Positions 3,201-60,581 of a stretch of DNA of 64,000 bases are shown piece after piece. The first letter of the stretch is position 1. Each line of letters opens with the position of its first letter. The notes beneath the pieces were generated by a model. The model was not told where the DNA came from. It searched no databases and saw nothing but the letters and a program-made list of their open reading frames with translations. This DNA is from Epithemia pelagica. Lineage: Eukaryota > Protista > Bacillariophyta. A program made the translations under genes and the position numbers. Where the stretch lies: the NCBI GenBank assembly GCA_946965045.2, contig OX337235.1:1984001-2048000 (forward strand). Direction: 5' to 3'.

Positions 3201-4110
3201 TTTGGCATTTTTGGATTCGGGGAGGGGTGAGGGTAGCCGGTGGCGTGTTGGTCGTCAATCGTTTGACGGCGGCTCTGTAGTTACCGAGATCGGCCAGTTG
3301 TTGCGCCGAGCGGGTTTTCCATTGTGGGAGTTGGTCTGTTGGTGATGTTTGCTGTTGTTGGCGTCGTTGTTGCCGGTTTTTCTTGTTGTTGTTGTGGTTG
3401 GTCAGTTTGGAAGCGGTGTTGGGTTCCATATGGTTTGGTACAGTTCTTCTATTCTTCCTGCTTTCAGGAGGGACAGCCGGGCGCGGAAGGCGTTGGTGTA
3501 AGTTCGGTGCACTGTGTCTTTGATCGGTGCTAAGAGCAATGGCTCTAGCAAAATCAGCAGCTTCCAGAAAGTGCTGGCGTCGGTGTCATGTTGTTGTGGT
3601 CGTTCGTCTCGGATGACGGCCTGGGTGAGAGGTGGTGTTGCTGCAAGGAGCCATGAGATCACGTTGTTGTATGTGGAGTAGAATTCTGCTCTCAATGGCG
3701 GCTTGAGTTTGTGCCATAAGCTGCGTCGAAAGGGCGGTGGTGTAAGTTGTAGTTGGTGCAGGTAAGCTAGACTTTTCTTCCAGTTGGTTTCTGTCTCTGG
3801 TTGTGCATGTCGGTAGGTATGTAGGACTAGTTGAGTGTTTGTTTTGGACCTACTATGCTTTTTTGTTACGTGTTGTCTTAGATGGCCTTCCGTTGTGAAT
3901 ATGGCCGTGGTTGTGTCACAGGTTTGGCATGGATAAAAACCATGCTTGTTGCAGTACGATGGTGTTAAATAATCAGATGGGTGTGTCTCGTTGTGGGCGG
4001 TGATCAGGTGTTCTTTGATAGAAGCGTGGGGGTTGATTGTGAAGCGGCACTTTCCATGGACAGTCTGGGACTGGGCAGTGTCTCGGTGGTGTTGTTGTTG
4101 GTTTACTCAT
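221..4110 (-). pseudogene. ORF2 (pol) of the non-LTR element: zinc fingers, reverse transcriptase, RLE endonuclease; disrupted
   Basis: ATG at 4110 gives MSKPTTTPPRHCPVPDC; after a frameshift near 4050 come HLITAH and CQTCDTTTAIFTTEGHLRQHVTKKH. RT motifs: RLRPIGI, GGQYGI, LDLTNMFN, GFPQGCPLSP, SIMDD, FLGQPIG, QRLGGLG. Endonuclease region: CRC..GDHLFSC, RPADV, AIDVTI, PFTVDHLGGLG. In-frame TAG at 1643-1645 and 869-871; frame breaks near 4050, 3400-3310 and 2948. Confidence 0.85.
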
Positions 4111-7100
4111 CTGGCCCCTTGGCCCAGTTTGCATGCGGGACCACATGGCCGGTGCGCGAGTCGGCGACGGTGGAATTGCTCGTCTGTACCAAAGACTGAG
4201 CGAATCTCCACGCGTCTTGCGCGTCTGTGTCGTTCGTGAACGACTTTGTGTTTTCCAAAAACTTTCTCATTTCGTCTAAACGAGAGGGGTTGTTGTTTGC
4301 CACATACTTAAAGATAAGTTCGATCTCCTGCATTGTAGTGGCAAAAAACTCGTGTTCGTCGTTTTCGAGGTTGTCATCGCTGCCGATCAGGGCCCGGGAG
4401 TGATCGTCGGAGTCGTCCGTGTCCATCCTGTCTACGGTCGATTGTTCGTCGTCTTCCTGTTCGGTGAGTGGTGCAAATTGGTTGCGTTTGGCTGCAGGTT
4501 TGGAGTCTTCTTCCTCTGGGTTTGGTGCATACGAGTTTGTTTGTGCGGCCACCGTCGTCCAGTCGGTTCCGTCCTCGTATGGGTCACTTTCTTCGTCTTC
4601 TGTTGGTTGCATGGCCGCGGCGCTTCGTTTGTTGGCCGGTGGGCTGGTGTTTGTCGGCGTACTTTGGTTGTTGGTGTGGTTGTTGTTGCTGTCTCCGGAC
4701 GTCTCGTCGAGGTTGTTGTGTTTGCGACGGAGCAGACGGTTGGTGAAGGCTAGCAGCCTGTTGGTGTGGCTTGAGGAAGTTGGGGTTGTCGGGTTTTGGC
4801 CTGTGGTGGTCTGTCTTGGTGGTGTTGCCGCTACTGCCGCCAGAGTGGGGAGAAGAATGTTTTCAGGAAACTCTGGGTGCTGCCGGATGGTGTTTGTTGT
4901 TAACATGTGGGTGTCCGGTGTTTTTCGCAAATAAAGGGTGTAGAATTGCGGATCCGGATCTTCGTTCTCAAATTCTGGAAAAAGGGCCACGAATTCTCGG
5001 AGGTTTTGCAGGCGCTTCCAATCTCCGTCGGTTGCTTCTTGGTTGATTGGTTTAAGCTTGATTTTGACGCAAGCTCCGAAGAACTGGTCAATGTCCTTGA
5101 TTGCCTCTAAGGTTGTTGTTTGATTGCTCTGAGAGGTTGGCATCGGGATGATTTGGATGTTATTCTTGCACCAAGCCAGCTCTGTGTTGCGGTTGGCGGA
5201 TAGGTAGGCGTTGTAACTCCGAAGTAGTGCCTCAAAGTTGCTTTTGGACGAGGCTGTGATGTAAATTGCCGGTACTTGTCCGCGTTGTTTGTTTTTCAGC
5301 TCGCCGCTGAAAGTTCCAGCACGACAGCCGATGTGGTTGTAATAGTTCACGTGGTTCAACTTCCGAGGGAGGTGAGGGGTGAGGATGTTTTGGATGTCGG
5401 AGGACAGGTCCAAAGCTGCTCGACGGTGTTTGATTGTTTGAGCCGGCACCCCTACGACTATGCCGTAGGTGTCGCTCGTGCGGTTGTTGCATGCTGGTTG
5501 GTAGACGTTGATCTGGTCGTACCGTGGGTATATCGTTGGGTTGGATTGGCGGGTGCCTGGGCGAAGGATTGTTTGGGACCCGTGCTCGTCGTAGGAAAAG
5601 TCGTCGTTGTGGTGTTTATGCCACATTTGCAAGACAAAGCGAAGACCTTGTTCGAAGAAAACACCGGTGTCGAATGCGTCGTTCGCTGGAGCTGAGGAGA
5701 GGGTGACATGGAAGGTGGATGTGTGTCCACTTCCCTTGTTGGATCGGTTTTGGTTGTCTGTGCCACGGAGGGGGCGACTGGGAGACTGTTTCGTTTCAAG
5801 GAAGTCCACGGAGTGGACCTGTAGCCACATGGGCTCCTCCCTCTTGCTGTGGTGGAAGAAAACGTCGTTGGATTGCGTTTTCAAAGCTTGTTCTGTGAGT
5901 CGCGGGAGAGTGGACTCGATCTCGTGGTTGTGGTGGTGGTTCACTGCCACGTGGAGGTGGAACAGGAAGGACGGTTCGGGAGACTGGGGACGTTTCGCCA
6001 CTTTCGGTTTCCTGTAAGGGTTTGTCACGGGCGTGCCTTTCTCGTTGCCGTTGGGTTTGGTGGTTGAGTTGTCGTCGCTCGTCGGGGTTTTGTTGTTGGT
6101 GGGTTGCGTTTCCTTGGTTCCTTGAGTGCCTTCGTCCGTGTTTTGTTCGTCGGTGGTGTCGATTTGGTTGGGCTCGTTGTTGGTGGATTCGGTGGTGGTG
6201 TTGTCGTTGTTGGTGTTGTCGTGGTGGTCGTTGGTGTTCTTTTTTTCTGTGTTTTTTGGTTGTTCTTTTTTTCTGTGTTTTTTTTCGTTATTGGCAATGT
6301 TTCCTTTCTTGTTGTTGTCGTTGGTGGTTGGTTTGGTTGTCTTACGGTCCGGGGTGATGGCGGTGGTGCCGTGGATGGTAGTGGCGACGAGAGGGATGGG
6401 TCCGAGGGCGGAGGAGGTGATTTTTGCCCGGGTCGAGCGACGGCCGGCGGAAGGTTTGGAGTGGACTTGCATCTTGGTCGGTTGTTGCTGTTTGCGGTGC
6501 TGGTCGGCTGGAGGAGGCTCCCTGTGGAAAACTCTGTTTCCACTGTATTTGTGGGGAGGGCATTTTGTCGTTTTGTTGGTTTGGGTCATTGTGAGTTGGA
6601 GGATGACTCGCCGTAGGGCATTGTCTAACTGTTTCGTTTTGGGGATCTTGGGCCTTGGGCAGCTGGGTTTGGTGGTGTTGGGTGACGGCATTGGGTCTGA
6701 TACGGGCTCGGTGGCGGTATTTGTTGTTGTGGTCGTGTGGCTTTGCCGGAAGTGTTCCACTCCTGGTGGCGGGCGGGGGAGTGCCTGTTGGTGTCTTGCT
6801 CTGCCGACGTGGCCTGGTTCTTCGTTGCTGTCGTCGTGTCTTCGAGCTTGAGGTGTTGGTGCTGGGAGGTGGTCTGGCAGGGTCATCCGCTTGGTCCGTT
6901 CGGTCATCCTTTCGGTTGGGTTGGTCATCCTTTCGGTTGGTTCAGTCATCCGTTTGTTGGGCTTGGTTTCGGTCCGGGGGCCTGTTGGATTGGTGTTGTT
7001 GTTACACCGTAGCAGTCGCTGAGGGTCTGTGTTTCCGTTGGAAGTCGCTTGTTCGGCCAGCGGTGGGTTCTGAGTTGTACCATGGTGGCGGGGGAAACGT

Positions 7101-7306
7101 GTAACGGCGTTGTGAGGTTTGTTTTGTTTGTTTTTCCTGAGACCATGGAGAGATTCCATGGTCCATGTTGCGGTCGCCATGCGTTGCATGTGTTGCCAAC
7201 CGATGGGCGGGGGTGGATTGGCGTTGTTTCGGCAGTTGGGTCGTGGTTCGGCCATGGGAATTTTCTTGGCCAATATGGCCCATGGCGGGTCCGCGTCGCG
7301 CTCCAT
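4103..7306 (-). CDS. ORF1 of the non-LTR element (1067 aa, low-complexity N- and C-termini, structured-looking centre)
   Basis: Long open frame directly upstream of ORF2; its TAA overlaps the ORF2 ATG (gATGagTAA). No catalytic motif recognised. Confidence 0.7.
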   Translation of the reverse strand: MERDADPPWAILAKKIPMAEPRPNCRNNANPPPPIGWQHMQRMATATWTMESLHGLRKNKQNKPHNAVTRFPRHHGTTQNPPLAEQATSNGNTDPQRLLRCNNNTNPTGPRTETKPNKRMTEPTERMTNPTERMTERTKRMTLPDHLPAPTPQARRHDDSNEEPGHVGRARHQQALPRPPPGVEHFRQSHTTTTTNTATEPVSDPMPSPNTTKPSCPRPKIPKTKQLDNALRRVILQLTMTQTNKTTKCPPHKYSGNRVFHREPPPADQHRKQQQPTKMQVHSKPSAGRRSTRAKITSSALGPIPLVATTIHGTTAITPDRKTTKPTTNDNNKKGNIANNEKKHRKKEQPKNTEKKNTNDHHDNTNNDNTTTESTNNEPNQIDTTDEQNTDEGTQGTKETQPTNNKTPTSDDNSTTKPNGNEKGTPVTNPYRKPKVAKRPQSPEPSFLFHLHVAVNHHHNHEIESTLPRLTEQALKTQSNDVFFHHSKREEPMWLQVHSVDFLETKQSPSRPLRGTDNQNRSNKGSGHTSTFHVTLSSAPANDAFDTGVFFEQGLRFVLQMWHKHHNDDFSYDEHGSQTILRPGTRQSNPTIYPRYDQINVYQPACNNRTSDTYGIVVGVPAQTIKHRRAALDLSSDIQNILTPHLPRKLNHVNYYNHIGCRAGTFSGELKNKQRGQVPAIYITASSKSNFEALLRSYNAYLSANRNTELAWCKNNIQIIPMPTSQSNQTTTLEAIKDIDQFFGACVKIKLKPINQEATDGDWKRLQNLREFVALFPEFENEDPDPQFYTLYLRKTPDTHMLTTNTIRQHPEFPENILLPTLAAVAATPPRQTTTGQNPTTPTSSSHTNRLLAFTNRLLRRKHNNLDETSGDSNNNHTNNQSTPTNTSPPANKRSAAAMQPTEDEESDPYEDGTDWTTVAAQTNSYAPNPEEEDSKPAAKRNQFAPLTEQEDDEQSTVDRMDTDDSDDHSRALIGSDDNLENDEHEFFATTMQEIELIFKYVANNNPSRLDEMRKFLENTKSFTNDTDAQDAWRFAQSLVQTSNSTVADSRTGHVVPHANWAKGPDE
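6881..6956 (-). repeat. Imperfect 21-bp tandem repeat, about 3.5 units, inside ORF1 (MTEPTER/MTNPTER/MTERTKR)
   Basis: Units starting GGTCATCC at 6881, 6902 and 6923 and AGTCATCC at 6944 on the plus strand. Confidence 0.85.
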
Positions 7307-15902: not shown

Positions 15903-17018
15903 ATGTCGTCACGTGGTCGTCGAAGGCACGAGATGCCATCTTCCGAGGTACCGACCCTTGTTCCTGTTTCGGTCGAGGATGATGATGAAGAAGACGACAA
16001 CCATGAAAACAAATTCGATTCGAGCTCGCTTCGCCACGGCTGCAGTTCTGACAGTAACATGGACAAGAACGTTAATAGCGCTAGCACATGCACTAGGACC
16101 AACTCGACATGCTCGACAGAAAGTGCTTGGAGAACGGCAAGAACTGAGAAACCCGTTTACAAGTACGTTGGTACGAGTGGATGGCTTGTTCATGGGGTAC
16201 GGCTAGTCCTGAAATCCTACACCCAATACATGGCGGTAGCGGGCAATCCCGACAAGGGTTTGAAATTTTTACAATACACCTTGTGGTTTGCCTCCCACAT
16301 CTGTAGAAGTGCTTCTACGGTGCCGTCGAGACGACCGATTGGCACTTTTGCGAACGTATCGCTTTTCTTTTCAAAGCTCTCGTCGCACCTTTCCTTGACC
16401 CGTTGTGGGTTGCGATTGTTGGAATTTCCCGTGGCCCTGGAAGCCTTGGTCCACAATAGTTGGATGGTACAAAGTCGGACTCTTTCGTCGTCACATTTTG
16501 CCGGATGGGACAACATACTCGGTCGTCTCTTGGCAATGAGCATGTGTCTGTACTACCCAATGGAACACATTGCCTTGTTCCATTCCGTAGTAGCCACCAG
16601 GCGCTTGCCAAACTCGGAGAAGCTGCGACCTCCTCAAGAGTGGTGGTCAATGTGGAGTTGTCGGCGATGGCTAGCATTTACAGTCCTCGAACTTTTCCAA
16701 TGCGCATTGCAGTGTCACGAACTACGACAAGAACAAAAACGTGCGCTCTCGATCCAAAGCAACAAGCCGGAGGATGTTTCTCCTTCCTCAGACGTAAACA
16801 TTGACCAGAACCATAAAGCGCAACGACATTTGCAGTTGCAAGTCCTCCGAAATATTTTGTGTACACTTCCCGCTCTTCATCGCTCCTTACCTCACTGTGA
16901 CACAAAGCCATGGCTACCACCCACGTCGGTCCAATTTCTTCTTTGGTTGGAATCGTTAGTTTGCGTCTATCAATCCACTTTTGCTTTCTGCACCACCCAC
17001 AAGAACAAGACAGACTAG
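15903..17018 (+). CDS. PEX11: Peroxisomal biogenesis factor 11-like protein
   Basis: DKGLKFLQY, SLTRCGLRL and YYPMEHIA match the PEX11 pattern (DK..K..QY, R...R, Y...D/E). First ATG at 15903. Confidence 0.55.
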   Translation: MSSRGRRRHEMPSSEVPTLVPVSVEDDDEEDDNHENKFDSSSLRHGCSSDSNMDKNVNSASTCTRTNSTCSTESAWRTARTEKPVYKYVGTSGWLVHGVRLVLKSYTQYMAVAGNPDKGLKFLQYTLWFASHICRSASTVPSRRPIGTFANVSLFFSKLSSHLSLTRCGLRLLEFPVALEALVHNSWMVQSRTLSSSHFAGWDNILGRLLAMSMCLYYPMEHIALFHSVVATRRLPNSEKLRPPQEWWSMWSCRRWLAFTVLELFQCALQCHELRQEQKRALSIQSNKPEDVSPSSDVNIDQNHKAQRHLQLQVLRNILCTLPALHRSLPHCDTKPWLPPTSVQFLLWLESLVCVYQSTFAFCTTHKNKTD

Positions 17019-51403: not shown

Positions 51404-52477
51404 TGTGATGTGCCATCGATAAGACACCAAAAAGGTGGCCAGATGCGCTCCATATTGAAGTTAGCAGGAATGTGTCTTATGGCTGTCGAGCGCTTCTTGT
51501 TTCTTCACCTAGCATTTCTATCGAGGGATGACGATCACTTCTCTGAGCTCATCCACCTACCGTAGGTATGTGACCAAACTCGAAAGCAAATAGAACGCTC
51601 CATATCCCAACTAGTTTCGTGTTTGGTGGTCTTCCTTCCTTCTCATCCCCATTCTTGCTTGGACGTTCTCTTGATAGGATGCATCTGATGAGAACATATG
51701 GATATGTCTTCGCTCCCGCCCGGTTAGTAATGTGCTGGAGCCTCATGGGGTTGCATGTGAACAGCATGCCGGGTTGATCCTGGCAACAACGGGTAGTGGC
51801 CAAGCAGCTGGATGTGTTGTCCTTTGGAACCAGTGACATTAAGGAACAGGCACCGTCTTTGCTTTCTGAGAATGCATCTGAACAGGACAAGTCACTTTTC
51901 CCAACTCCCAATGAAGGATCTAGCTAGCTGGGGAAATCCGTAACATTTACGTGCGCAGTTGGACTGTTCGATTTTTATTTCATGTACGATCCATCTGGCA
52001 GGTGTTCCCGGCTCTACAAGGACTATCTTGCGTGCGGACTGGGAGAAACTGGTTATGCCCGGGTTGCACCAGCAACTACTCCTAGGTAGGCAGCTATCAC
52101 ACCCCGGCACGGCATAGCACATCAGAACCACAAGGTTTGTTCAACCAATTGCGGATTGCGGAGTGTGGATTGTGGATGGAACAGTTCACCCAGAGTATAA
52201 GGCTCGCCATGCGTTCGGAAAGAGCCGACCCCTCTAAACGCTCCAAATAATTCTCCTGTGTACTGTTTAGATTAGTCAATTCTTCGTTTCTACAAAATGA
52301 ATAAATTTTTATCTTCAGTATGCGTTTTTTTGTATCCGTATAGCACTGTATGTACCAAACCAAGTTCGGAAGTATGAGAATTGAACCATAGAAACGAAAG
52401 AAGAGTCATGGGGGAGAGTACATTTCGGGCCAAAGGACGACAACAGAACACGGAGCATTTGCGTCCCACATTGAGAC

Positions 52478-52860
52478 CAGAGTTGTGAAGTACCAAATTA
52501 CCAATTTCACCAAATTATATCATTTTGTACTTTCTTTTACGGTAATTTGTCAAAGTCCAAGTACACCTTTCACAATCATTGATTTTAGCCCAAACTACGA
52601 AAGTCCCCCACCCCCTTTTCCAATTATCTCATTTAAATTACCAAATTACACCTGCCCCCAATTTCCATGTACTTTTATGTCCCAAAGTCCTTCCCCCCCC
52701 AATCCACGACGGTACTTCATGTATCCAATTCCCTTCCCAGAGTCACATGACCAGTACTTTAATTACCGAAGTCCATCCACATTACATCTCCTTATCGCCC
52801 AATAAGTACAAAATCACTCCTCATCTCACCCAATAGGTACTTCTCATTCCCCAACCATTC
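52478..52860. repeat. Left subterminal AAGTAC/GTACTT array of the hAT element
   Basis: About 8 copies in both orientations in AT-rich sequence. Confidence 0.8.
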
Positions 52861-53061
52861 ATTGACATCTCCAATATTCCAAATGATCACATACAAACGA
52901 TGAGAGAACAGATGAGATATGAGGCCTGAGGGTCATCGTTCATCTGCACCTCTGCTTTGTGCTACCTCAAAAACACACCCGTGAATGTGTTTCCAACTGA
53001 TCTTCCACAGTGTCCGCTCCCCAATCTTCATTGTTCCCATTCCAGCTTGCTTAAGAACTCA

Positions 53062-56000
53062 ATGTCTGACGACGACGAAGCAGCAGCCCCAGATCCTGGT
53101 CCTCATGACAAAATTGTGGAACAGAAGGACCAAGTTGACGAAGAGCATCTACCCCCTGCCAAGAAAACGGTGAAAAAGAAGAATCCTGGATCGAAAACAA
53201 AGAAGAAGTCTCCTCAACTGGTCAGGAAACCATCGGCTTTGGAGAAGAAAAAGAAAGCAGTCGATGCTGACTTTGCTCAAGTTGCCCAGACTACGGAACA
53301 ATTTCACCAAGAAGAAAAGGATCTCATCCCACTCATCGATGGCAAGTTTACGCCCTTCATAAGCTACGGCAGAAACACCTCCCCATATTGGAAATGGGTG
53401 ACTCACGTTGACTGGTTGAAATTCGAGTTGTTTTTGGTTGAACAACAAGAGAAAGGAACACTCGAAGACCTTCCTGGCGCTCGCGATGGTTTCGACAAGC
53501 TGGTTGCCGCTTTTGAGGACTTAGTGAAGATTGGAGAAGACTCCTTCATGAACACCGCGGAAAAACGAAAACCCATAGTTGCAAAAGAACGATACTCTCT
53601 TATTTGCAAGACAGCCGTTATCTGTCCACTCTGTTTCAACACTGGTTCAAAACCATTGAATGAATGCGTCATCTTATGCAGTCATTACAAACCTTCGAAC
53701 GTTGACCAACATGTTCTGAAGCACCACAAAGGATTGGATGAAGAAATTAAGAACAACAAAAAAACTTCTGACAAACAATCGACGCTGTCGACTTTCCGCC
53801 AGAATACGACGAAATCTGAAGCCAAGTCTCAGCTGCAGACCTTGATATACCGTTTTGTGAACGACTGTTGCTTACCCGCAGTGACAGTTGAGAAACCACA
53901 ATTTCGCGAACTCATACAATACGCCATCAAAAACGCGACAGCACTCAAGGATAGCCATGCTGAGATTATGAGCCGACGTCAGATTACGAAAGTACGAATC
54001 TCCTCGTACAAACAATTCTTTATCACGGTCGGCCATCTTATACGCAAGAGCCGTGACGAATACAAGCGTCTGTGTGCGCAATCTGTACCATTCGTGACCT
54101 GCTGTCACGATATATGGCAAGCAAAGAACCATGACGTTCTCGGTGTCACCATCATGTTTACCGACCCGAGAAATTGCGTGGTATATAAAATTCCAATTGG
54201 GTTGGCAGAGTGTCACGGGCATGCTGCCACCGACGTGGCCAATTTGACCGACTCCCTTCTACTGAGTGTTGGTCTTTCCACCGCTGACCTATGTGCTGCT
54301 GTCAACGATAATACTTCATCTGCCGTTTTGGCGGGTAAGTATATCATTGGCAATCCCGACAAAACTGGCAAGTGCGATATGCACAAGGCCGAGCTCGTGT
54401 TAAAACACGCTACTGGCTTGGTACAACGCTACCAAAATCGCATTTTGATAGATTCCAACGACTCTTTTTGTGATCTATGGAGGAGTGTTTTCAAGAAATT
54501 TGCGAGCTGGTTGACCTCCAGCAAGGCACCACACCGGTGGGAACGATTGAAGGATGGAGTCAAGAAATTTGGTGGCAAAATTGTCCTGATCCCCTTGCCA
54601 AATGACACCCGGGTTGGGGGGCTTGTTCTGTCAATTCACAACTTGTTTCGCGATAAGCCCTGCATGGATGAATATTGTAAGACAGCCACTCTAAGCGACC
54701 CCAATTTCAAGAAGCGGTATCCCTCAGAGGACGAATGGTTGCAACTCGCGCAATACGAAGGCATCCTAACCAACATAAAGATGGTCGCAATGAAATTACA
54801 GACCGATGATCCTGGTTCCAACTCCGCCTCTCTTCTGGAAATTTACACTTCTTTCTACCATGCTCAAAGAATGAGAATGGAAGGTCCCGACTGTGGTGTT
54901 GGGTGTTTGTTGCGACCCAATAAACCTCAAAAGTATTGGGACGCTAGAAAAAGTATTGACGACTTGGATGAGGCACGGAGAGCCATTCCATACAAAGATC
55001 TCTATCCTGGGCCCAGATTGTTGGTGAGACGAATCATCCAAGAGTTTCGCTACTATTTGTACAATCGGGATCCGGACGCTTTAAAAGCCGTTGGATGCAA
55101 TCCCCTTTTGGCAAATGTATATGCCGACATGTTTGTAAATTTCGGTGTATACGATCAAGACAACGTGAAGGAAGGTCGCACTATCATAATCAACGACATG
55201 ATAGACCGCTTCACTAACCATCGGGTCTCGGCTATTGGAGCTGCGATGACGTCTCAAAACAAGAAAACATCTGACTCCTCGTCGGAATTGGTCGTCGAGC
55301 CGAATAGAGCCACTCTCAAATATAAGTCTATGGATGTATTTGAAAGAATGCGCAAAGCAAGTGACCTGAGAAAACAGGCACTACTGAATATAACTGGAAA
55401 AGCGTCCAAGGCCGGCGAAGAACAAGTTATACAACAAGCACTCAAAAAGGCATGCACAGAGTGCTATGACGACTTTCTCCGCCATTGCGAGTCACAAATT
55501 GACTTCAATTGGGCGGATATTATCAAACAATATCCAACGGAGGCTTATTCCAAGGAATGGCCGAAATGGGACGATGCTCAGAAGCAGATGTTTGCCCGAC
55601 ATTGTCACAGTCGTAACTATTTGGAAGTGGGTCGGTTCTTTGACTTAATGGGATGGTGGCGTAAACACTCAAGTAACTGGTCCTACGTGTTTCCATCCGC
55701 TATCGTGTGGTTGGCTAAACCGGCAACTAATGCGTTCCAAGAACGCATTTTCTCGATTGGCAGTTGGATGATGCAGAACAAGCTAATGTCGAATTTGGAC
55801 AGGAAGACAAATGAAATGCGCACAATGGAGCGTATAACACGACAGCTAGTGGCTGAAATCGAAAGTAACGAAAAGGACATCAAGGCAGGAAAGGGTACCA
55901 CGAAATCATACGATAAGCGAGAAATAGATCCTGATGACATGGCAATTAGCGCGGCGATTGAAGAGAGTTTGAAAGAACAAGACAACAAGTTTGCTGTGTC

Positions 56001-57162
56001 AGGAATGAGGGACTCCACGTCTTCGTTACGGCGGTACTTCAACACTCGAGACATTTCTAAAGACGTAATCAAGGACCCCGCCGTAACAATGTCGTTCTAT
56101 CCAGTAGAAGGTGCCAAAATACCAAGTGAAGACAGCCTGCAAGGTAGAAAGAGTGCAGGTGGTACAAAACCACCACCCGATGCGCCATTGGATAATGACT
56201 CGATGGACACAAAACCACCCGCAAAGATTGACCCGACTGCTACCAACAAAGACCATAGCTCAGGACCTGTTGGAAATAGCGCCAAAGGACGAAAGGCGAA
56301 CAAGAATGTCAGTCCCTATACCCTAACGACACACGGAGAAGACACAACTCCAGCCAATGCAAACCGAATTGTCTATGTCACCATTGATGATCGTTACGAT
56401 GACGATTCGGTTGATGCATCTATTCCGCCACCAGAAGAACCAGACGAAGACAGTGATGAAATCATCAACCGTCTACTAGATGATGAATGGATGGACAACA
56501 ATGACGACGATGATGGACTAGTCGACGTCCAAGATGACTTTGAGGTAAACTTCGAGGATGGAACAGGGTTGGTGGACCTGAATGAGAGTGATAGGAAGAA
56601 TAACGAGAAAGATACAGTGGTTGAAGAAGACATGGTGGCTCCAGGTGATGTTGCTGCTGAAGATGACGATGCCGACGATGTACTTGTTGTCACTCCACCA
56701 ACAAAGAGAAAGACCAATCAGAAGTTGAGCTCGAGTAAAAGGCGCAAGAGAAAGTGCCCACCCAATCCCAGCAGTGGTAGTGGCAAGAAAAAATCTAAAT
56801 CGTCCATTGGTAAGAAGCCAAAACCCAATACACCAAAACGGAAAAAACCAACGGAACCAGTACGCTTCTCTCCCCGGAATAAGAAGGGTGCGGCATCAAA
56901 GCAACAAACTATCGATACTATGGCTGGTGTGGCAAGTGCACAAAGCAGGAAGAAGAGCATCAGGGGAAAGAAGGACGACAAAGAAGAAGACCAGGGCGAG
57001 GATGAGGTTAGTGAGCAAGGGGATAGTATGGACAATGACGATACATTCGTGGATAGTGATGGAAATGAGGATGATGACGAGTACGAAGATGAAGATGAGA
57101 TGAAGGAGAATGAGAATGACGAGGAGAACAACGATGAGAACGACGAGGAGAATGATGAATAG
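53062..57162 (+). CDS. hAT transposase, uninterrupted (1366 aa from the first ATG)
   Basis: BED-like finger (CPLC...HVLKHH), CCHDIWQ (D1), VNDNTSS (D2), CDMH (CxxH), DTRVGG, GWWRKHSSNW, AKPATNAFQERIFS (hATC, catalytic E); long acidic and Lys-rich tail. Confidence 0.92.
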   Translation: MSDDDEAAAPDPGPHDKIVEQKDQVDEEHLPPAKKTVKKKNPGSKTKKKSPQLVRKPSALEKKKKAVDADFAQVAQTTEQFHQEEKDLIPLIDGKFTPFISYGRNTSPYWKWVTHVDWLKFELFLVEQQEKGTLEDLPGARDGFDKLVAAFEDLVKIGEDSFMNTAEKRKPIVAKERYSLICKTAVICPLCFNTGSKPLNECVILCSHYKPSNVDQHVLKHHKGLDEEIKNNKKTSDKQSTLSTFRQNTTKSEAKSQLQTLIYRFVNDCCLPAVTVEKPQFRELIQYAIKNATALKDSHAEIMSRRQITKVRISSYKQFFITVGHLIRKSRDEYKRLCAQSVPFVTCCHDIWQAKNHDVLGVTIMFTDPRNCVVYKIPIGLAECHGHAATDVANLTDSLLLSVGLSTADLCAAVNDNTSSAVLAGKYIIGNPDKTGKCDMHKAELVLKHATGLVQRYQNRILIDSNDSFCDLWRSVFKKFASWLTSSKAPHRWERLKDGVKKFGGKIVLIPLPNDTRVGGLVLSIHNLFRDKPCMDEYCKTATLSDPNFKKRYPSEDEWLQLAQYEGILTNIKMVAMKLQTDDPGSNSASLLEIYTSFYHAQRMRMEGPDCGVGCLLRPNKPQKYWDARKSIDDLDEARRAIPYKDLYPGPRLLVRRIIQEFRYYLYNRDPDALKAVGCNPLLANVYADMFVNFGVYDQDNVKEGRTIIINDMIDRFTNHRVSAIGAAMTSQNKKTSDSSSELVVEPNRATLKYKSMDVFERMRKASDLRKQALLNITGKASKAGEEQVIQQALKKACTECYDDFLRHCESQIDFNWADIIKQYPTEAYSKEWPKWDDAQKQMFARHCHSRNYLEVGRFFDLMGWWRKHSSNWSYVFPSAIVWLAKPATNAFQERIFSIGSWMMQNKLMSNLDRKTNEMRTMERITRQLVAEIESNEKDIKAGKGTTKSYDKREIDPDDMAISAAIEESLKEQDNKFAVSGMRDSTSSLRRYFNTRDISKDVIKDPAVTMSFYPVEGAKIPSEDSLQGRKSAGGTKPPPDAPLDNDSMDTKPPAKIDPTATNKDHSSGPVGNSAKGRKANKNVSPYTLTTHGEDTTPANANRIVYVTIDDRYDDDSVDASIPPPEEPDEDSDEIINRLLDDEWMDNNDDDDGLVDVQDDFEVNFEDGTGLVDLNESDRKNNEKDTVVEEDMVAPGDVAAEDDDADDVLVVTPPTKRKTNQKLSSSKRRKRKCPPNPSSGSGKKKSKSSIGKKPKPNTPKRKKPTEPVRFSPRNKKGAASKQQTIDTMAGVASAQSRKKSIRGKKDDKEEDQGEDEVSEQGDSMDNDDTFVDSDGNEDDDEYEDEDEMKENENDEENNDENDEENDE

Positions 57163-57250
57163 TGATGAGTAGTATGCAAGCAAAGAATGAATGAATGAAG
57201 AGTAATGAGTGATGACAAAGATGAAATTAGGTAACAAACTAGGAGAGCGA

Positions 57251-59023
57251 TTAATATTTGTGAATCATTGTCATTATCTTCTTTCTGACAGGGTCGCTGA
57301 CTCGGTCTGTCTTTGTCAATGCTGCTATAATTTTGGATTTTGAGTCTATGGTACTGCAATGTTGACCGAATGCACCAAATAGGGGGTTTATTGCGTACCA
57401 CTTGTCTTGGGGCAACCATGATTCCAACACTTTGGAACAGGCAATACCAACAATGCCGGTGGGAGTCCACGAGAGATGATCGGCCCACCGGATCACGTGA
57501 ATATCCGCAGGTATGCCATCAACTCGGTGAAATGCTTCTTCGATGACGATGCATGCAGTTTTATATCCAATTCCGTGTAGTTTCGTAAGCTCATAGATTG
57601 TTATGTCTTCAGGTATTTTACCACCGTGGTACTGACAAAAATAATCTGCAGCATTGACAATCCTCTCTGTGTTGTTGTAATACAGTCCTGATTCCGAAAG
57701 AAGGCTACAAAAAGCATTCATGCCAAATTGTTGGGCAATGTCGATTACTGCATTTGCCGAAGTGAGGCCACATGCAAACAAGCGTGGGATTATTGAGCTC
57801 AGTTGGGAATCGGACGTGCTAGAGCTCATGCAGATTGTGATTAATATCATGAAAGGCCGATCAGCAGTAGGGTCATCAGTGAATTGGAGCCAAGCAGTCC
57901 ACTTATCACGTGGAGCAAATATTCCTTTCTCTTTAAGCTCAGCATGAAAAGACATCATTTGGGACAATTCCGAAATGCGTTGTTGTCGAACGGTTTCTTC
58001 CACAGGAGTAATACGAAGTGAGCATCGAGCGGGTGTTGTTAGGTTTGGAGGGTCTCCCGGTTGATGTCGTCTGTCCGGATATTGTATTTCTTCTTTAGAA
58101 TGCGAAGTAGATTGCAAGAATTGGGAAATGATTGCGTTGCGGTATCGTGTTGAATACGAGTGTGTGGAATACTGAACCGACGACTTTTTGGGATATTGTT
58201 GTTTTCTTTGACGTGATTTCGGAGTCGTTTGTTTGGTTCTGTTATCGTGATCCGTATAATTGTTGTATGGGATTGTGTGGTCCAATGGTTGTGAATTGTC
58301 CTGTGATTTGGGAGTTATATGTTCGGTCGAAAATGATGCCACCAATTTAGAGACATAAAGGTTCAGGGACAGAGGGAAACAGAATTCTGAATCGGTAGAC
58401 TTGTCCTTTGAATCTTCGACGTAGTAATCGACGATCATTTCCTGCGGGACTTGTTTACAGACAATAGGTACACCGGTACGGAAGAACCAGGATGATACAA
58501 TCGAATGAGCCTTGGAAGGGGGGCGTGGTGGGCTTGGTTTTTTTCCGTAGGTAAATTGAAGGCAGTCCCAATAGTGTTGGTTCTTCACTACGGTAATGTT
58601 TGGACGACAAGAAATTGAAAGAAACAGTCGATTGGAGAAGAAAGGTTCGTCTGGAACAAAGAAGTGTTGGTAGGAATCGATGGATTGGTGAGGGGAATAT
58701 CCATCCTTGAGGGTCCGTATAATAATTCCAACAATCAGCTGGACTCGTTCGAAGAAAATGAACTCCGAAATCCGGCATGTGTGTGTGCGAGATTGCCATG
58801 TATTCTTTTCTTGGAATTGGATATGTCCGTTGTTGCGAAGGAGCCATGCGATGGTTTGGCTTTGGACGGCACGTCGTAGAGCATTCGACGTCATGGAAGC
58901 GTGTTGAGTGGTTCTCATGAAGTCGTACATGAAGGAAAAAAAGGCCTCATTGGAATGTAGACAGTAAATTGGGAAGCATTTCGATTCGAAACGGATGCAA
59001 TTGCGTTCAACATAGTCATCCAT
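57251..59023 (-). CDS. Endonuclease III (Nth)-like HhH-GPD DNA glycosylase/AP lyase with a long N-terminal extension of unknown function, transposon-encoded
   Basis: C-terminal about 170 aa (57853-57356): FMILITICMSSSTSD, GLYY, GGKIP, LTKLHGIGYKTA (HhH, Lys at 57560-57562), GIPADIHVIR (Asp at 57503-57505), LESWLPQDKWYAINPLFGAFGQHC. 590 codons without a stop. Confidence 0.88.
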   Translation of the reverse strand: MDDYVERNCIRFESKCFPIYCLHSNEAFFSFMYDFMRTTQHASMTSNALRRAVQSQTIAWLLRNNGHIQFQEKNTWQSRTHTCRISEFIFFERVQLIVGIIIRTLKDGYSPHQSIDSYQHFFVPDEPFFSNRLFLSISCRPNITVVKNQHYWDCLQFTYGKKPSPPRPPSKAHSIVSSWFFRTGVPIVCKQVPQEMIVDYYVEDSKDKSTDSEFCFPLSLNLYVSKLVASFSTEHITPKSQDNSQPLDHTIPYNNYTDHDNRTKQTTPKSRQRKQQYPKKSSVQYSTHSYSTRYRNAIISQFLQSTSHSKEEIQYPDRRHQPGDPPNLTTPARCSLRITPVEETVRQQRISELSQMMSFHAELKEKGIFAPRDKWTAWLQFTDDPTADRPFMILITICMSSSTSDSQLSSIIPRLFACGLTSANAVIDIAQQFGMNAFCSLLSESGLYYNNTERIVNAADYFCQYHGGKIPEDITIYELTKLHGIGYKTACIVIEEAFHRVDGIPADIHVIRWADHLSWTPTGIVGIACSKVLESWLPQDKWYAINPLFGAFGQHCSTIDSKSKIIAALTKTDRVSDPVRKKIMTMIHKY

Positions 59024-59179
59024 TTGTTTGGGTATTAGACATCAAAGGTCAGAGGTGCAAAAGGCGGTGAAGAGGTGCGAGGATCGAGGATACAGCAGCA
59101 AGACTTTGTGCTCTGTGGTATGTGTTACTGAGAGTTACTAAGTATCGTGTAGTTTTCACTGCTGACTACGTGAATTAAG

Positions 59180-59578
59180 TGCTAAAGTACATAAGGAAAG
59201 TAGAGCTAAATTACCTATGAATGTGTAATTTGACGGGTACTTTCGAAAGTACCTCTTGTAAAGTGATGAAGTACTTAAGTCCCTAATGAAAGTACATACC
59301 GGTTGGGTGGAGGTACTTAAGTACCTAAATGAAGTACTTACTGGTTACTGCAGATGCCTTGGAAGGAGTAATGATCCGATTGATAGTTGGGATGAGTACT
59401 TCTTCTTACTAAAGTATTTCAGTCTAAATTGTAGAGTGTACTTTTTAGTCATTATTCCGCTGTGTATTGAATTCTTATAGTAATTTTAAGTACAAAAGTA
59501 CTTACTAATCAATTCTTTAGTGTACTTGAAAGGACTAAAGTCCTCTAAAAACTCGATATTTGGTACTTCACAACTCTG
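59180..59578. repeat. Right subterminal AAGTAC/GTACTT array of the hAT element
   Basis: More than 10 copies in both orientations. Confidence 0.85.
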
Positions 59579-60581
59579 ATTGAGACATGAATGAAGGCCA
59601 ACTGCCACTGCACGATGAATGCACTTCCAATTTTCCGAGTCTTTTCAAAATTCGTCGCAGGTGGCCAATCTTCAATAATTGGTACTCTTTCATTGACACT
59701 CTGGGTACGGTACGACCAGTTTCGGGTTGGGTATTGGGCAATCTTTACTAGTTACAAGTACTCGTAGTTCGTACTACGAGTAGTATTATTTTTTGTAGGG
59801 CAACCCAACACCCAACCAACGTAGCCAACCCCTAACATTGGAATTATCGAACAATACTATCAATTTCGATGGAGGATTGCGTCATTCTCTCTCTAGAGAT
59901 GCCCATTGGGACACTGTCAGTTCTTAAACACCCTTCTTGGCTATTCCTAAATCGAATTCAATGCCATTAAGTCATTCCGTCTTGGTCCGAACCCTATACT
60001 ATCGCCTTTTCGCTTCTCGACTCACGTGGTCGATGCAAAAATGAGAAGACAATAACATTATCGTCTTCTGTCTTCTGGATTTCGCAAAGCACAAAACAAT
60101 AGTGTAGTAGGTACTAGTACTTGGTGCTTCTACCTAGTCGGAGCTCGTAGTTAGTAGCTAGTACTCGTACTCCTGCAACTCCTAGGTACTTACGAGTTAC
60201 AGGTTTTACTCGTACAGGGCAACCGTTGCCGCAAGAGAACCGATCAAGTTCCCGAATAGTCGTTTTGTTGTAGCTTATAGCACGTGCGAATTTAGCGGGT
60301 CGTCACCAAATCGTGGCTCGAGGAATGGCTTACCGATCGAGATTGGACTCATGTTCAAATCTCTAGACGGATGATCCACCTCGGATTCCAACAAGAAAGA
60401 TTTTCTGTACCTGGACTAGGTGATACTCTGACTAGGTAGTACATCTTTAAGCGGTGCCTGTTGCAAATCGCACAGCGCACTGAAAAAGTGAAAAATGAAA
60501 AAGTTCCCTTGTCACCACTTTTTCTAATTCGTTCTTCCACACCAACGTTTCATCATTGCCATTGACAGCATCCTTTCAACA

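What the first reader, a model, noticed from the sequence alone, without database searches (positions are those of the whole stretch)
52478..59578. hAT transposon carrying its own endonuclease III-like DNA glycosylase: candidate new system
Seen: perfect 21-bp TIRs and an 8-bp TSD enclose two uninterrupted, convergent genes, a 1366-aa hAT transposase and a 590-aa HhH-GPD protein whose start lies next to the right subterminal array. Both catalytic residues are present (Lys in GIGYKTA, Asp in ADIH, 19 residues apart as in eukaryotic NTH1). Known: hAT elements normally encode only a transposase; HhH-GPD enzymes excise damaged bases, and the plant DME/ROS1 branch excises 5mC; diatoms methylate transposons; TE-encoded anti-silencing factors exist (VANC). 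I know of no hAT lineage with this cargo. Inferred options: removal of 5mC or its deamination products from the element, nicking that helps resolve the hairpinned flanks left by hAT excision, or recent passive capture of a host gene.
Basis: partly seen in the sequence, partly recalled or inferred. Interest (0 to 1): 0.92.

Follow-up and report, generated by a model that had tools for sequence, protein, structure and literature searches.

The report
Diatom hAT transposon carrying DNA glycosylase
A young, multi-copy cut-and-paste (hAT) transposon of a pennate diatom carries, besides its transposase, its own endonuclease-III-like DNA repair enzyme. The two genes have been inherited together through many diverged subfamilies of the element, so the enzyme is a long-kept part of the transposon and not an accidental pick-up.

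Summary
A 7,101-bp element (52478-59578) has perfect 21-bp TIRs and an 8-bp TSD (ATTGAGAC). It holds two intact convergent ORFs: a 1366-aa hAT transposase and a 590-aa protein whose C-terminal half is NTHL1/endonuclease-III-like, with the catalytic Lys488 and Asp507.

- **Copies.** A 99.7% identical copy sits at another site with another TSD. The 90% protein cluster has 16 members on at least 12 contigs.
- **Conserved pairing.** At least eight diverged subfamilies in the same diatom assembly have the same glycosylase/transposase pair inside TIRs with 8-bp TSDs. Glycosylase identity between them is 31-56%. Two sediment-metagenome contigs have the pair too.
- **Shared history.** The two gene trees agree at their supported nodes. 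Synonymous sites are saturated while dN is 0.30-0.54. Lys and Asp are kept.
- **A distinct clade.** It lacks the Fe-S cysteines and has a new duplicated N-terminal domain plus a basic motif. The nearest canonical NTH proteins are at most 39% identical.

Recent passive capture is therefore rejected. What the enzyme does for the element is not shown. My favoured, inferred reading is element-directed base excision that counteracts cytosine-methylation silencing. One related high-copy hAT lacks the gene. I found no published description.

The parts
52470..52477 (.). Left copy of the 8-bp target-site duplication, ATTGAGAC
   Evidence: Read directly. It is identical to 59579-59586.
52478..52498 (+). 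Left terminal inverted repeat, 21 bp, CAGAGTTGTGAAGTACCAAAT
   Evidence: It is the perfect complement of 59558-59578, and 0 matches are expected by chance.
52478..53061 (.). Left subterminal region holding 9 AGTAC/GTACT motifs, presumed transposase binding sites, plus the region upstream of the transposase gene
   Evidence: 15 motifs per kb against 1.2-1.3 per kb elsewhere. That they bind the transposase is an inference.
53062..57162 (+). hAT transposase gene, 1366 aa, intact, with a long acidic/basic C-terminal tail
   Evidence: Dimer_Tnp_hAT at aa 847-917. One search found 30 homologue clusters, most with PF05699. The copy in L001 is 99.6% identical.
57163..57250 (.). 88-bp spacer between the two convergent stop codons
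   Evidence: ORF coordinates.
57251..59023 (-). Glycosylase gene, 590 aa, intact
57254..58006 (-). Catalytic NTHL1/endonuclease-III-like HhH-GPD domain (aa 340-590) with no Fe-S cysteine motif. The Lys488 codon is 57560-57562 and the Asp507 codon is 57503-57505.
   Evidence: Sequence match to PDB 7rdt at 8e-18. Family profile against 7rds at 1.5e-21. Foldseek match to 7rds/7rdt at 2e-7 and 7e-7. Lys and Asp are invariant in 21 sequences and present in at least 90% of 34. 0 of 32 family members have a C-x6-C-x2-C-x5-C motif.
58019..58156 (-). Conserved, strongly basic motif (aa 290-335): TR...SRSK..I.Y....RH.PG.PPKL
   Evidence: T292, R293, Y315, R319, H320, G323 nearly invariant. Net charge is +2 to +10 and pI 9.1-11.5 across paralogues. 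pLDDT is 80-97.
58157..58318 (-). Predicted disordered, poorly conserved linker (aa 236-289)
   Evidence: pLDDT 35-40. Mean pairwise identity 17%.
58319..59023 (-). Family-specific N-terminal domain (aa 1-235), an internal tandem duplication of a module of about 110 aa. Trp60 and Trp179 are invariant. No known relative was found.
   Evidence: Models with pLDDT about 84 and pTM 0.75. hhalign of half 1 against half 2 gives probability 94%, E 9e-8. No Pfam, PDB-sequence, PDB-fold or BFVD match.
59024..59578 (.). Right subterminal region holding 18 AGTAC/GTACT motifs and the region upstream of the glycosylase gene
   Evidence: 32 motifs per kb. See also families D1 and I21.
59558..59578 (-). Right terminal inverted repeat, 21 bp
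59579..59586 (.). Right copy of the 8-bp target-site duplication, ATTGAGAC

Best explanation
**Shown.** The locus is an intact, recently mobile, autonomous hAT transposon of a raphid pennate diatom. It belongs to a lineage whose members carry two genes between their TIRs: the transposase and a convergently oriented, clusterless NTHL1-like DNA glycosylase. Transposase and glycosylase have been inherited together while the lineage split into many subfamilies, and both genes are under purifying selection.

**Inferred from conserved residues.** The protein is an active bifunctional glycosylase/AP-lyase. Lys488 would form the Schiff base and Asp507 would act as the general base.

**Inferred by analogy, about 35-40% likely.** The enzyme is made from the element's right end and enters the nucleus, with the basic motif at aa 290-335 serving as NLS and/or DNA clamp. 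It is then brought to copies of its own subfamily, possibly by its fast-evolving acidic N-terminal domain binding the cognate transposase on the subfamily-specific subterminal repeats. There it excises a modified pyrimidine (5mC or an oxidation or deamination product), so that base-excision repair restores unmethylated cytosine. This would keep the transposase promoter and the ends free of the CpG methylation that silences young transposons in diatoms.
For: - **Element anatomy and mobility.** Perfect TIRs and TSD. A second copy, 99.7% identical, lies at another site with TSD CTCACCAA. A sister-subfamily element occurs at two sites with different TSDs and only 3 nt differences. The 90% protein cluster has 16 members on at least 12 contigs.
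- **Conserved two-gene layout.** Loci L003-L009 and L011 of the same assembly, and metagenome contigs L010 and L093, have the glycosylase followed by a convergent hAT transposase. TIRs of the type CAGRGTTGTG with 8-bp TSDs enclose both genes in L004, L005, L006, L007, L008 and L011, and in nested form in L009.
- **Co-divergence.** Both trees recover (window,L003), (L004,L005) and (L006,L007) and give the same order of nearest relatives.
- **Selection.** Between subfamilies synonymous sites are saturated while dN is 0.30-0.54 in both genes. ORFs of about 550-630 codons are open in at least 10 lineages. The catalytic domain averages 58% pairwise identity against 17-25% for the linker and N-domain. 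Lys488 and Asp507 are invariant in 21 sequences. Window against L001 shows 3 synonymous to 1 non-synonymous change in the glycosylase.
- **Not a host copy.** In an exhaustive search, family members score 1e-20 to 1e-183, then there is a drop to canonical NTH at 1e-17 or weaker and at most 39% identity. 31 of 32 family sequences form one clade with SH-aLRT 99.
- **Fold.** pLDDT 83.7, with top PDB matches human NTHL1 and endonuclease III.
- **Context for the mechanism.** The host is a diatom. In Phaeodactylum, loss of DNMT5a removes methylation and de-represses young TEs (PMC9998398). DNA transposons, including hAT7 in fungi, carry TET/JBP 5mC oxidases (PMC12730594). VANDAL elements encode sequence-specific anti-silencing proteins (PMC5735166). 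Subterminal hexamers differ between subfamilies while the N-domain evolves fast.
Against: - Nothing here measures activity, substrate, expression or methylation.
- The catalytic domain is nearest to oxidised-pyrimidine enzymes (NTHL1, Nth). No DME/ROS1 or MBD4 chain appeared in the PDB sequence searches.
- The helix-invading Gln of the LSxQTxD motif is replaced (MSSSTSD), with unknown effect.
- CpG observed/expected in these elements (0.69-0.90) is slightly lower than in their flanks (0.86-0.98) and similar to other TEs. There is thus no sequence sign that they escape methylation-driven decay.
- The subterminal motifs contain no CpG.
- The N-domain is acidic to neutral, so it is not an obvious DNA binder. 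Binding to the transposase is pure conjecture.
- A related hAT (L092), whose transposase cluster has 205 members in another assembly, has no detectable glycosylase. The gene is therefore not needed in cis for proliferation.
Confidence: 0.5

Rival explanations
1. Transposition cofactor or break-repair helper. The glycosylase/AP-lyase acts in the transposition reaction itself or in its aftermath. It could process donor-site hairpins or the gapped 8-bp target, or nick DNA near the ends to promote transpososome assembly or homology-directed refilling of the donor site, which would raise copy number. This would resemble the obligatory second protein of PIF/Harbinger elements.
For: - The gene is strictly linked with and co-diverges with the transposase.
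- The lyase Lys is conserved.
- The N-domain evolves fast alongside subfamily-specific ends, as expected of a partner in a subfamily-specific complex.
- The CpG data give no sign of an anti-methylation effect.
Against: - As far as I know, characterised hAT transposases (Hermes, Ac, Tol2) need no element-encoded cofactor.
- A base-excision enzyme has no obvious substrate in hairpin or gap intermediates.
- The glycosylase-less L092 subfamily is the most abundant relative seen.
Confidence: 0.2
2. Non-catalytic or regulatory accessory protein. The NTH fold is used as a DNA-binding or chromatin-recruiting module, for example to bind AP sites, nicks or element DNA, to recruit host repair or chromatin factors, or to regulate the transposase, without removing bases.
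For: - The Fe-S loop is lost in all members and the conserved Gln of the LSxQTxD motif is replaced.
- The score is well below the curated endonuclease III cutoffs: TIGR01083 gives 67 against 211.7 bits, and Pfam gives 16.4 against 26.2.
- A large extra domain and a basic arm are present.
Against: - Lys488, Asp507 and the surrounding HhH-GPD residues are invariant or nearly so across lineages whose synonymous sites are saturated. Catalytic residues would not be expected to be retained like this in a purely structural protein.
- Clusterless active relatives exist: a clusterless MutYX is in the PDB hit list, and yeast Ntg1 is one from my memory.
Confidence: 0.12
3. Host-beneficial or general repair cargo. 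The enzyme is an ordinary oxidised-pyrimidine glycosylase that adds BER capacity to the cell. It would lower the cost of carrying the element, or protect all DNA including the element, with no targeting.
For: The closest solved relatives are NTHL1 and endonuclease III.
Against: - A diffusible, untargeted benefit gives little selective advantage to the element that encodes it. Yet the linkage has lasted through deep divergence.
- The family-specific N-domain and basic motif are conserved too, which suggests a specialised role.
Confidence: 0.1
4. Recent passive capture of a host NTH1 gene, or an adjacent host gene that is not really part of the element.
For: None beyond the general fact that DNA transposons sometimes pick up host fragments.
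Against: - The gene lies inside TIRs and TSDs in seven or more independent insertions of at least six subfamilies.
- No canonical NTH above 39% identity appears in a library that includes this assembly.
- The family forms a separate clade.
- Its tree is congruent with the transposase tree.
- The pair also occurs in two contigs of a sediment metagenome.
Confidence: 0.02

Closest known systems
hAT superfamily DNA transposons (Ac, hobo, Tam3, Hermes, Tol2)
   Same: 8-bp TSD, short TIRs starting CAG, subterminal short-motif arrays, and a transposase with the hAT C-terminal dimerisation domain.
   Different: Classical hAT elements encode only the transposase. This lineage has a conserved second gene, a DNA glycosylase, and an unusually long transposase of 1200-1370 aa. 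No solved hAT transposase was found by plain sequence search.
Human NTHL1 / bacterial endonuclease III (Nth), the HhH-GPD bifunctional glycosylases
   Same: The fold matches, and so do the HhH motif, the catalytic Lys and Asp, the eukaryote-type spacing of 19 residues between them, and the eukaryote-type C-terminal segment.
   Different: There is no [4Fe-4S] cysteine motif. The sequence reads MSSSTSD in place of LSSQTKD. Scores are far below the curated family cutoffs. The protein adds a duplicated 235-aa N-domain and a basic motif, and it is encoded by a mobile element.
TET/JBP-dioxygenase-carrying DNA transposons of fungi (KDZ, hAT7, Harbinger and others; PMC12730594)
   Same: These are cut-and-paste transposons, including a hAT lineage, that carry an enzyme acting on DNA bases beside the transposase. 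The proposed role is removal of the silencing mark.
   Different: The enzyme class differs (oxidase against glycosylase/lyase), as do the host kingdom and the TSD length (hAT7 gives 7 bp). There is no sequence relationship.
VANC anti-silencing proteins of Arabidopsis VANDAL (MULE) transposons (PMC5735166)
   Same: A transposon-encoded accessory protein co-evolves with subfamily-specific motifs and, in VANDAL, causes loss of methylation at its own family. This is the model for the mechanism proposed here.
   Different: VANC is not an enzyme of known class and is unrelated in sequence. Specific targeting is shown for VANC and only conjectured here.
Plant DME/ROS1 5-methylcytosine glycosylases
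   Same: Both are HhH-GPD bifunctional enzymes with Lys and Asp, which shows that this fold can excise 5mC.
   Different: DME/ROS1 keep the Fe-S cluster and have a split catalytic domain plus extra C-terminal domains (from my memory). No similarity beyond the superfamily was detected here.

Membership tests
hAT superfamily transposon | 8-bp target-site duplication | tested here: met
   ATTGAGAC on both sides in the window. Distinct 8-bp TSDs at L001, L004-L008, L011 and L092.
hAT superfamily transposon | Short TIRs with a conserved 5' CAG/TAG-type terminus | tested here: met
   21-bp perfect TIR beginning CAGAG. Related termini CAGRGTTGKG occur in the sister subfamilies.
hAT superfamily transposon | Transposase with the hAT C-terminal dimerisation domain (PF05699) | tested here: met
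   21.9 bits against a cutoff of 21.4 at aa 847-917, which only just passes. PF05699 is precomputed for most of the 30 homologue clusters and for neighbours.
hAT superfamily transposon | N-terminal BED-type zinc finger and a DDE RNase-H-like catalytic core | tested here: inconclusive
   No Pfam zf-BED or RNase-H-like hit at E<=0.1 and no PDB sequence hit. A CxxC...HxxxxH pattern is visible near aa 189-222. The catalytic triad was not mapped.
HhH-GPD superfamily, Nth/NTHL1 branch | Helix-hairpin-helix followed by a Gly/Pro-rich loop and the catalytic Asp, with the Lys that makes it bifunctional | tested here: met
   GIGYK(488)TA ... GIPAD(507)IH aligns to NTHL1 and endonuclease III. K488 and D507 are invariant in A1 and present in at least 90% of A2.
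HhH-GPD superfamily, Nth/NTHL1 branch | Endonuclease III fold | tested here: met
   AlphaFold model with pLDDT above 90 over most of aa 330-590. Foldseek matches 7rds at 2e-7, 7rdt with target TM 0.72, and 1orn, 1p59 and 2abk.
HhH-GPD superfamily, Nth/NTHL1 branch | Score above the curated family thresholds (Pfam PF00730; NCBIfam TIGR01083 nth equivalog) | tested here: not met
   PF00730 gives 16.4 bits against 26.2, and 24 of 34 family members hit it at E<0.01. TIGR01083 gives 67 bits against 211.7. It is therefore a divergent relative, not an equivalog of Nth.
HhH-GPD superfamily, Nth/NTHL1 branch | C-terminal [4Fe-4S] cluster loop, Cys-x6-Cys-x2-Cys-x5-Cys | tested here: not met
   No such motif in 0 of 32 family sequences. 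The alignment shows no Cys beyond FGxxGQ(H/L)C/x.
DME/ROS1 5mC glycosylases | Specific sequence relationship to DME/ROS1, the Fe-S cluster and the DME-specific flanking domains | tested here: not met
   No DME/ROS1 chain among the PDB sequence hits at E<=1 with the single protein or the family profile. The Fe-S motif is absent. Activity on 5mC cannot be tested with these tools.
Transposon-encoded anti-silencing systems (VANC-like; TET/JBP-carrying transposons) | The accessory protein lowers methylation or silencing of its own element family | not testable with these tools
   Only indirect data are available. The CpG observed/expected comparison was uninformative. Testing this needs methylomes and expression data.

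The most novel reading that the evidence does not exclude
This diatom hAT lineage encodes a self-targeted 'base-excision anti-silencer'. It would be a clusterless NTH-derived glycosylase tethered to its own element through a new, fast-evolving N-terminal domain, perhaps by binding the cognate transposase. It would excise 5-methylcytosine or a derivative and so erase the host's methylation mark from the element. That would be the first transposon-encoded DNA demethylase of the glycosylase type, and an origin of 5mC excision independent of plant DME/ROS1.
Probability: 0.3. Interest if true: 0.92.

Novelty: new variant of a known kind. Interest (0 to 1): 0.8.

Why it matters
Cut-and-paste transposons with conserved enzymatic cargo are rare. 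The known cases (TET/JBP oxidases in fungal transposons, VANC in Arabidopsis) have shaped ideas about how mobile elements fight epigenetic silencing.

This lineage adds a DNA glycosylase/lyase kept by a transposon over deep time, in diatoms, a major group of marine primary producers in which TE silencing depends on cytosine methylation. It gives:
- a directly testable candidate for transposon-driven active demethylation or self-repair;
- a new clusterless branch of the endonuclease III family;
- an orphan duplicated domain whose partner is unknown;
- intact, apparently active hAT elements that could serve as genetic tools in diatoms.

If the enzyme turns out to target specific sequences through its partner domain, it would also be of interest as a natural, programmable base-excision module.

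Tried and rejected
- **Metagenome scan.** It found no family members, so it added nothing on co-occurrence.
- **Numerical dN/dS.** NG86 and YN00 fail because synonymous sites are saturated. Only the qualitative result stands: dS is saturated and dN is 0.30-0.54. The single close pair (window against L001) has too few changes to test: 3 synonymous to 1 non-synonymous in the glycosylase, 5 to 4 in the transposase.
- **CpG observed/expected.** Used as a proxy for methylation history, it is uninformative because the whole genome is only mildly depleted.
- **N-terminal domain.** No hit in Pfam, PDB sequences, PDB folds or BFVD. The weak RNF25 RWD hit (E 0.32) and the RuvC/UvrC fold hits (probability 0.06 or less) were dismissed as chance.
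- **Transposase against PDB and NCBIfam.** Nothing found.
- **Naming the organism from 90% clusters of host proteins.** This failed because no names are attached. A homologue search of a host ERGIC protein did give the taxon.
- **TIRs and TSDs for the metagenome contigs.** L010 gave only a doubtful pair and L093 none. For these two the layout is shown, but not the element boundaries.
- **Ideas considered and rejected.** An unseen extra exon supplying the Fe-S motif is unlikely: only 88 bp separate the two stops, and all 32 relatives end the same way. The idea that the 590-aa ORF's N-terminal half is non-coding is contradicted by its conservation over the full length in paralogues and its confident fold.
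- **Expression.** It could not be assessed.


Full report
**1. The observation**

The sequence is as described. CAGAGTTGTGAAGTACCAAAT at 52478-52498 and its exact reverse complement at 59558-59578 are the only matches in the window even with three mismatches allowed, and none is expected in shuffles. The 8 bases outside each end (52470-52477 and 59579-59586) are both ATTGAGAC.

Inside lie two uninterrupted convergent ORFs:
- 53062-57162 (+), 1366 aa;
- 57251-59023 (-), 590 aa.

The stops are 88 bp apart. The first protein has the hAT dimerisation domain, Pfam PF05699 at aa 847-917. It only just clears the cutoff (21.9 against 21.4 bits), but the same domain is recorded for most of its homologues.

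The second protein aligns over aa 372-556 to human NTHL1 (8e-18) and to bacterial endonuclease III (1e-9). Lys488 in GIGYKTA and Asp507 in ADIH fall on the catalytic Lys and Asp. They show the eukaryote-type spacing of 19 residues.

Both ends carry arrays of AGTAC/GTACT, at 15 and 32 per kb against about 1.3 per kb elsewhere.

**2. It is a family, and it moves**

The window's glycosylase belongs to a 90%-identity cluster of 16 sequences on at least 12 contigs of one ENA assembly, ERZ21939226. Some of these may be alleles, because host genes also occur twice in that assembly.

One member, locus L001, is a separate insertion:
- It is 99.7% identical over 6.8 kb.
- It is flanked by a different TSD (CTCACCAA).
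- Its transposase is frameshifted.
- A 2.6-kb piggyBac-like insertion lies near the glycosylase end.

A sister subfamily is present at two sites (L007, L008) with different TSDs and only three nucleotide differences. These are signs of recent transposition.

**3. The two-gene layout is old and conserved**

- **Same assembly.** Glycosylase paralogues 31-56% identical to the window's over nearly the full length were found in the assembly. Wherever I looked (L003-L009, L011), each is followed by a convergent hAT transposase 39-61% identical to the window's.
- **Boundaries.** TIRs of the type CAGRGTTGTG and perfect 8-bp TSDs enclose both genes in L004, L005, L006, L007, L008 and L011. L009 shows the same in nested form. 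The elements are 6.8-7.1 kb.
- **Damaged copy.** In L002 a copia element has landed in the transposase.
- **Other organisms.** Two contigs from a sediment metagenome (PRJEB13118; L010 and L093) have the same pair in the same orientation. Their ends were not resolved.
- **Trees.** Maximum-likelihood trees of the two proteins from nine elements agree on every well-supported node: (window,L003), (L004,L005) and (L006,L007). They also give the same order of nearest relatives.

The simplest reading is one ancient acquisition followed by joint descent.

**4. Selection**

- Between subfamily pairs the proportion of synonymous differences is too high for a distance to be computed. dN is 0.30-0.54 for both genes.
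- ORFs of about 550-630 codons are open in at least ten lineages.
- Conservation is uneven in a meaningful way:

| Region | Mean pairwise identity |
|---|---|
| Catalytic domain | 58% |
| Basic motif, aa 290-335 | 42% |
| N-domain | 25% |
| Linker | 17% |

- Lys488, Asp507 and the surrounding HhH-GPD residues are invariant in 21 sequences and present in at least 90% of 34.
- The one close pair gives 3 synonymous to 1 non-synonymous change in the glycosylase. That is the expected direction but too few changes to test.

**5. What kind of glycosylase**

- **Separate clade.** An exhaustive search of 1.8 billion representatives gave 35 family clusters below 1e-30. There is then a sharp drop to canonical NTH proteins at 1e-17 or weaker and at most 39% identity. 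In a tree with 106 of those, 31 of 32 family sequences form one clade (SH-aLRT 99, stem 0.58). The sister pair P0056 and P0141 are also clusterless relatives.
- **Best solved matches.** The family profile hits human NTHL1 best (1.5e-21), then bacterial endonuclease III. OGG1 is marginal, and no DME/ROS1 or MBD4 chain appears.
- **Fold.** The AlphaFold model (pLDDT 83.7) matches NTHL1 and endonuclease III structures.
- **Departures from the textbook enzyme.**
  - No member has the Cys-x6-Cys-x2-Cys-x5-Cys Fe-S motif.
  - The LSSQTKD motif reads MSSSTSD.
  - Curated thresholds for Nth are not reached.
- **Additions upstream of the catalytic domain.**
  - A confidently folded 235-aa domain is an internal duplication of a module of about 110 aa (hhalign probability 94%). 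It has no detectable relative by sequence or fold. It is acidic to neutral.
  - A disordered linker follows.
  - An invariant-rich, strongly basic motif then packs onto the catalytic domain.

**6. Host and setting**

A flanking host gene (ERGIC/ERV) has these named hits:

| Organism | Identity |
|---|---|
| Epithemia clementina | 79% |
| Amphora | 58% |
| Seminavis | 51% |

The host is therefore a raphid pennate diatom near the Rhopalodiales. The window is rich in TEs, with two copia-like elements and a DUF6589 ORF.

**7. How it most likely works**

*Shown:* an autonomous hAT lineage with a linked, selected glycosylase gene that looks catalytically complete.

*Inferred:*
- It is a bifunctional glycosylase/AP-lyase.
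- It serves the element rather than the cell. An untargeted benefit would not keep the linkage for so long, and the family-specific domains are conserved.

*Favoured mechanism, about 35-40%, by analogy:* element-directed excision of 5mC or a derivative, or of its deamination product, which counteracts the CpG methylation that silences young TEs in diatoms (PMC9998398). The parallels are the TET/JBP-carrying transposons of fungi (PMC12730594) and VANC (PMC5735166). Subfamily-specific subterminal hexamers are AAGTAC, TAGTCA, AATTAC, GAATTA, AATTCA and AAGTCA. Together with the fast-evolving N-domain they fit subfamily-specific targeting, possibly through the transposase.

*Against this:*
- The nearest relatives act on oxidised pyrimidines.
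- The CpG content gives no sign of protection.
- The end motifs lack CpG.
- A related 7.07-kb hAT in another assembly (L092) has 3.3 kb downstream of the transposase with no detectable glycosylase, although its transposase cluster has 205 members.

*Rivals:*

| Reading | Confidence |
|---|---|
| Transposition or repair cofactor | 0.2 |
| Non-catalytic accessory protein | 0.12 |
| General BER cargo | 0.1 |
| Recent passive capture (rejected) | 0.02 |

**8. Novelty**

Full-text searches for hAT or DNA transposons together with glycosylase, HhH-GPD or endonuclease III found no description of such an element. The closest published analogue is the TET/JBP cargo of fungal transposons, including hAT7.

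I rate it a new variant of a known kind, namely a two-gene DNA transposon with DNA-base-modifying cargo. It contains a new clusterless branch of the endonuclease III family and an orphan domain.

**Limits**
- There are no expression, activity or methylation data.
- Gene models are plain ORFs.
- Copy numbers may include alleles.
- The library search cannot exclude a Repbase-only report.

Noticed in passing
L092:6950-14014 (ENA ERZ25042306 ctg3424l): A related hAT element of 7,065 bp with TIR CAGGGTTTGGAAGTCA and TSD AGCACCAC. Its transposase is 34% identical to the window's, and its 90% cluster has 205 members. The 3.3 kb downstream of the transposase has no detectable glycosylase, even with the family HMM and all filters off. 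This is either a loss or a lineage that never had the gene.
   Followed up: partly
L001:5205-16542 (ERZ21939226 ctg1270l): A second copy of the window's element with TSD CTCACCAA. The transposase carries a 1-bp deletion. A 2,634-bp insertion encoding a piggyBac-like (DDE_Tnp_1_7) ORF sits near the glycosylase end. It is accompanied by a duplication of 1.1 kb of the hAT, including glycosylase codons 1-291, and of 493 bp of the insertion.
   Followed up: partly
L002:12020-20036: A copia-type retrotransposon (RVT_2 ORF of 1895 aa with repeated flanking ORFs suggesting LTRs) is inserted into the 3' part of the transposase of a paralogous hAT-glycosylase element.
   Followed up: no
L009:9535-16844: Two hAT termini lie 12 bp apart (9535 and 9547), with matching partners at 16214 and 16844. 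This suggests one element inserted into the very end of another. The flanking histidine-kinase and DLH genes are duplicated about 17 kb apart.
   Followed up: no
window:1-8000 and window:20000-26000: Strong, sustained GC skew (0.22 to 0.33 in the first stretch, about -0.20 to -0.23 in the second) with opposite AT skew. The first stretch includes a 1067-aa ORF (4103-7306, -) with no Pfam match. The second coincides with a copia-like element.
   Followed up: no
window:19081-26973 and window:36480-41391: Two copia-like retroelements with gag-pre-integrase, rve, SH3_retrovirus and RVT_2 domains. In each the polyprotein is split into two ORFs. The first ORF of the larger one (1575 aa) has almost no recognisable domain.
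   Followed up: no
window:42175-46254: A 1359-aa ORF with only a weak DUF6589 match (E 1.7e-4, below the cutoff). It may be another mobile-element protein.
   Followed up: no
P0056 and P0141: Two outlying relatives of the glycosylase, also without Fe-S cysteines. They keep the PRDxW and MSSSTxD-like motifs but have different N-termini, and they branch as sister to the transposon clade. Their genomic context is unknown, so they could mark the source of the captured gene.
   Followed up: partly
ERZ21939226 contigs (loci L002-L009): Ordinary host proteins occur as two near-identical versions on different large contigs, for example 439,999 and 1,357,660 bp. The assembly therefore seems to hold both haplotypes or two close genomes. 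This matters for any copy count.
   Followed up: no
Element ends in the window, L004-L007, L009, L011 and L092: Each subfamily has its own enriched subterminal hexamer: AAGTAC, TAGTCA, AATTAC, GAATTA, AAGTCA and AATTCA. The outer 10 bp of the TIR stay nearly constant.
   Followed up: partly
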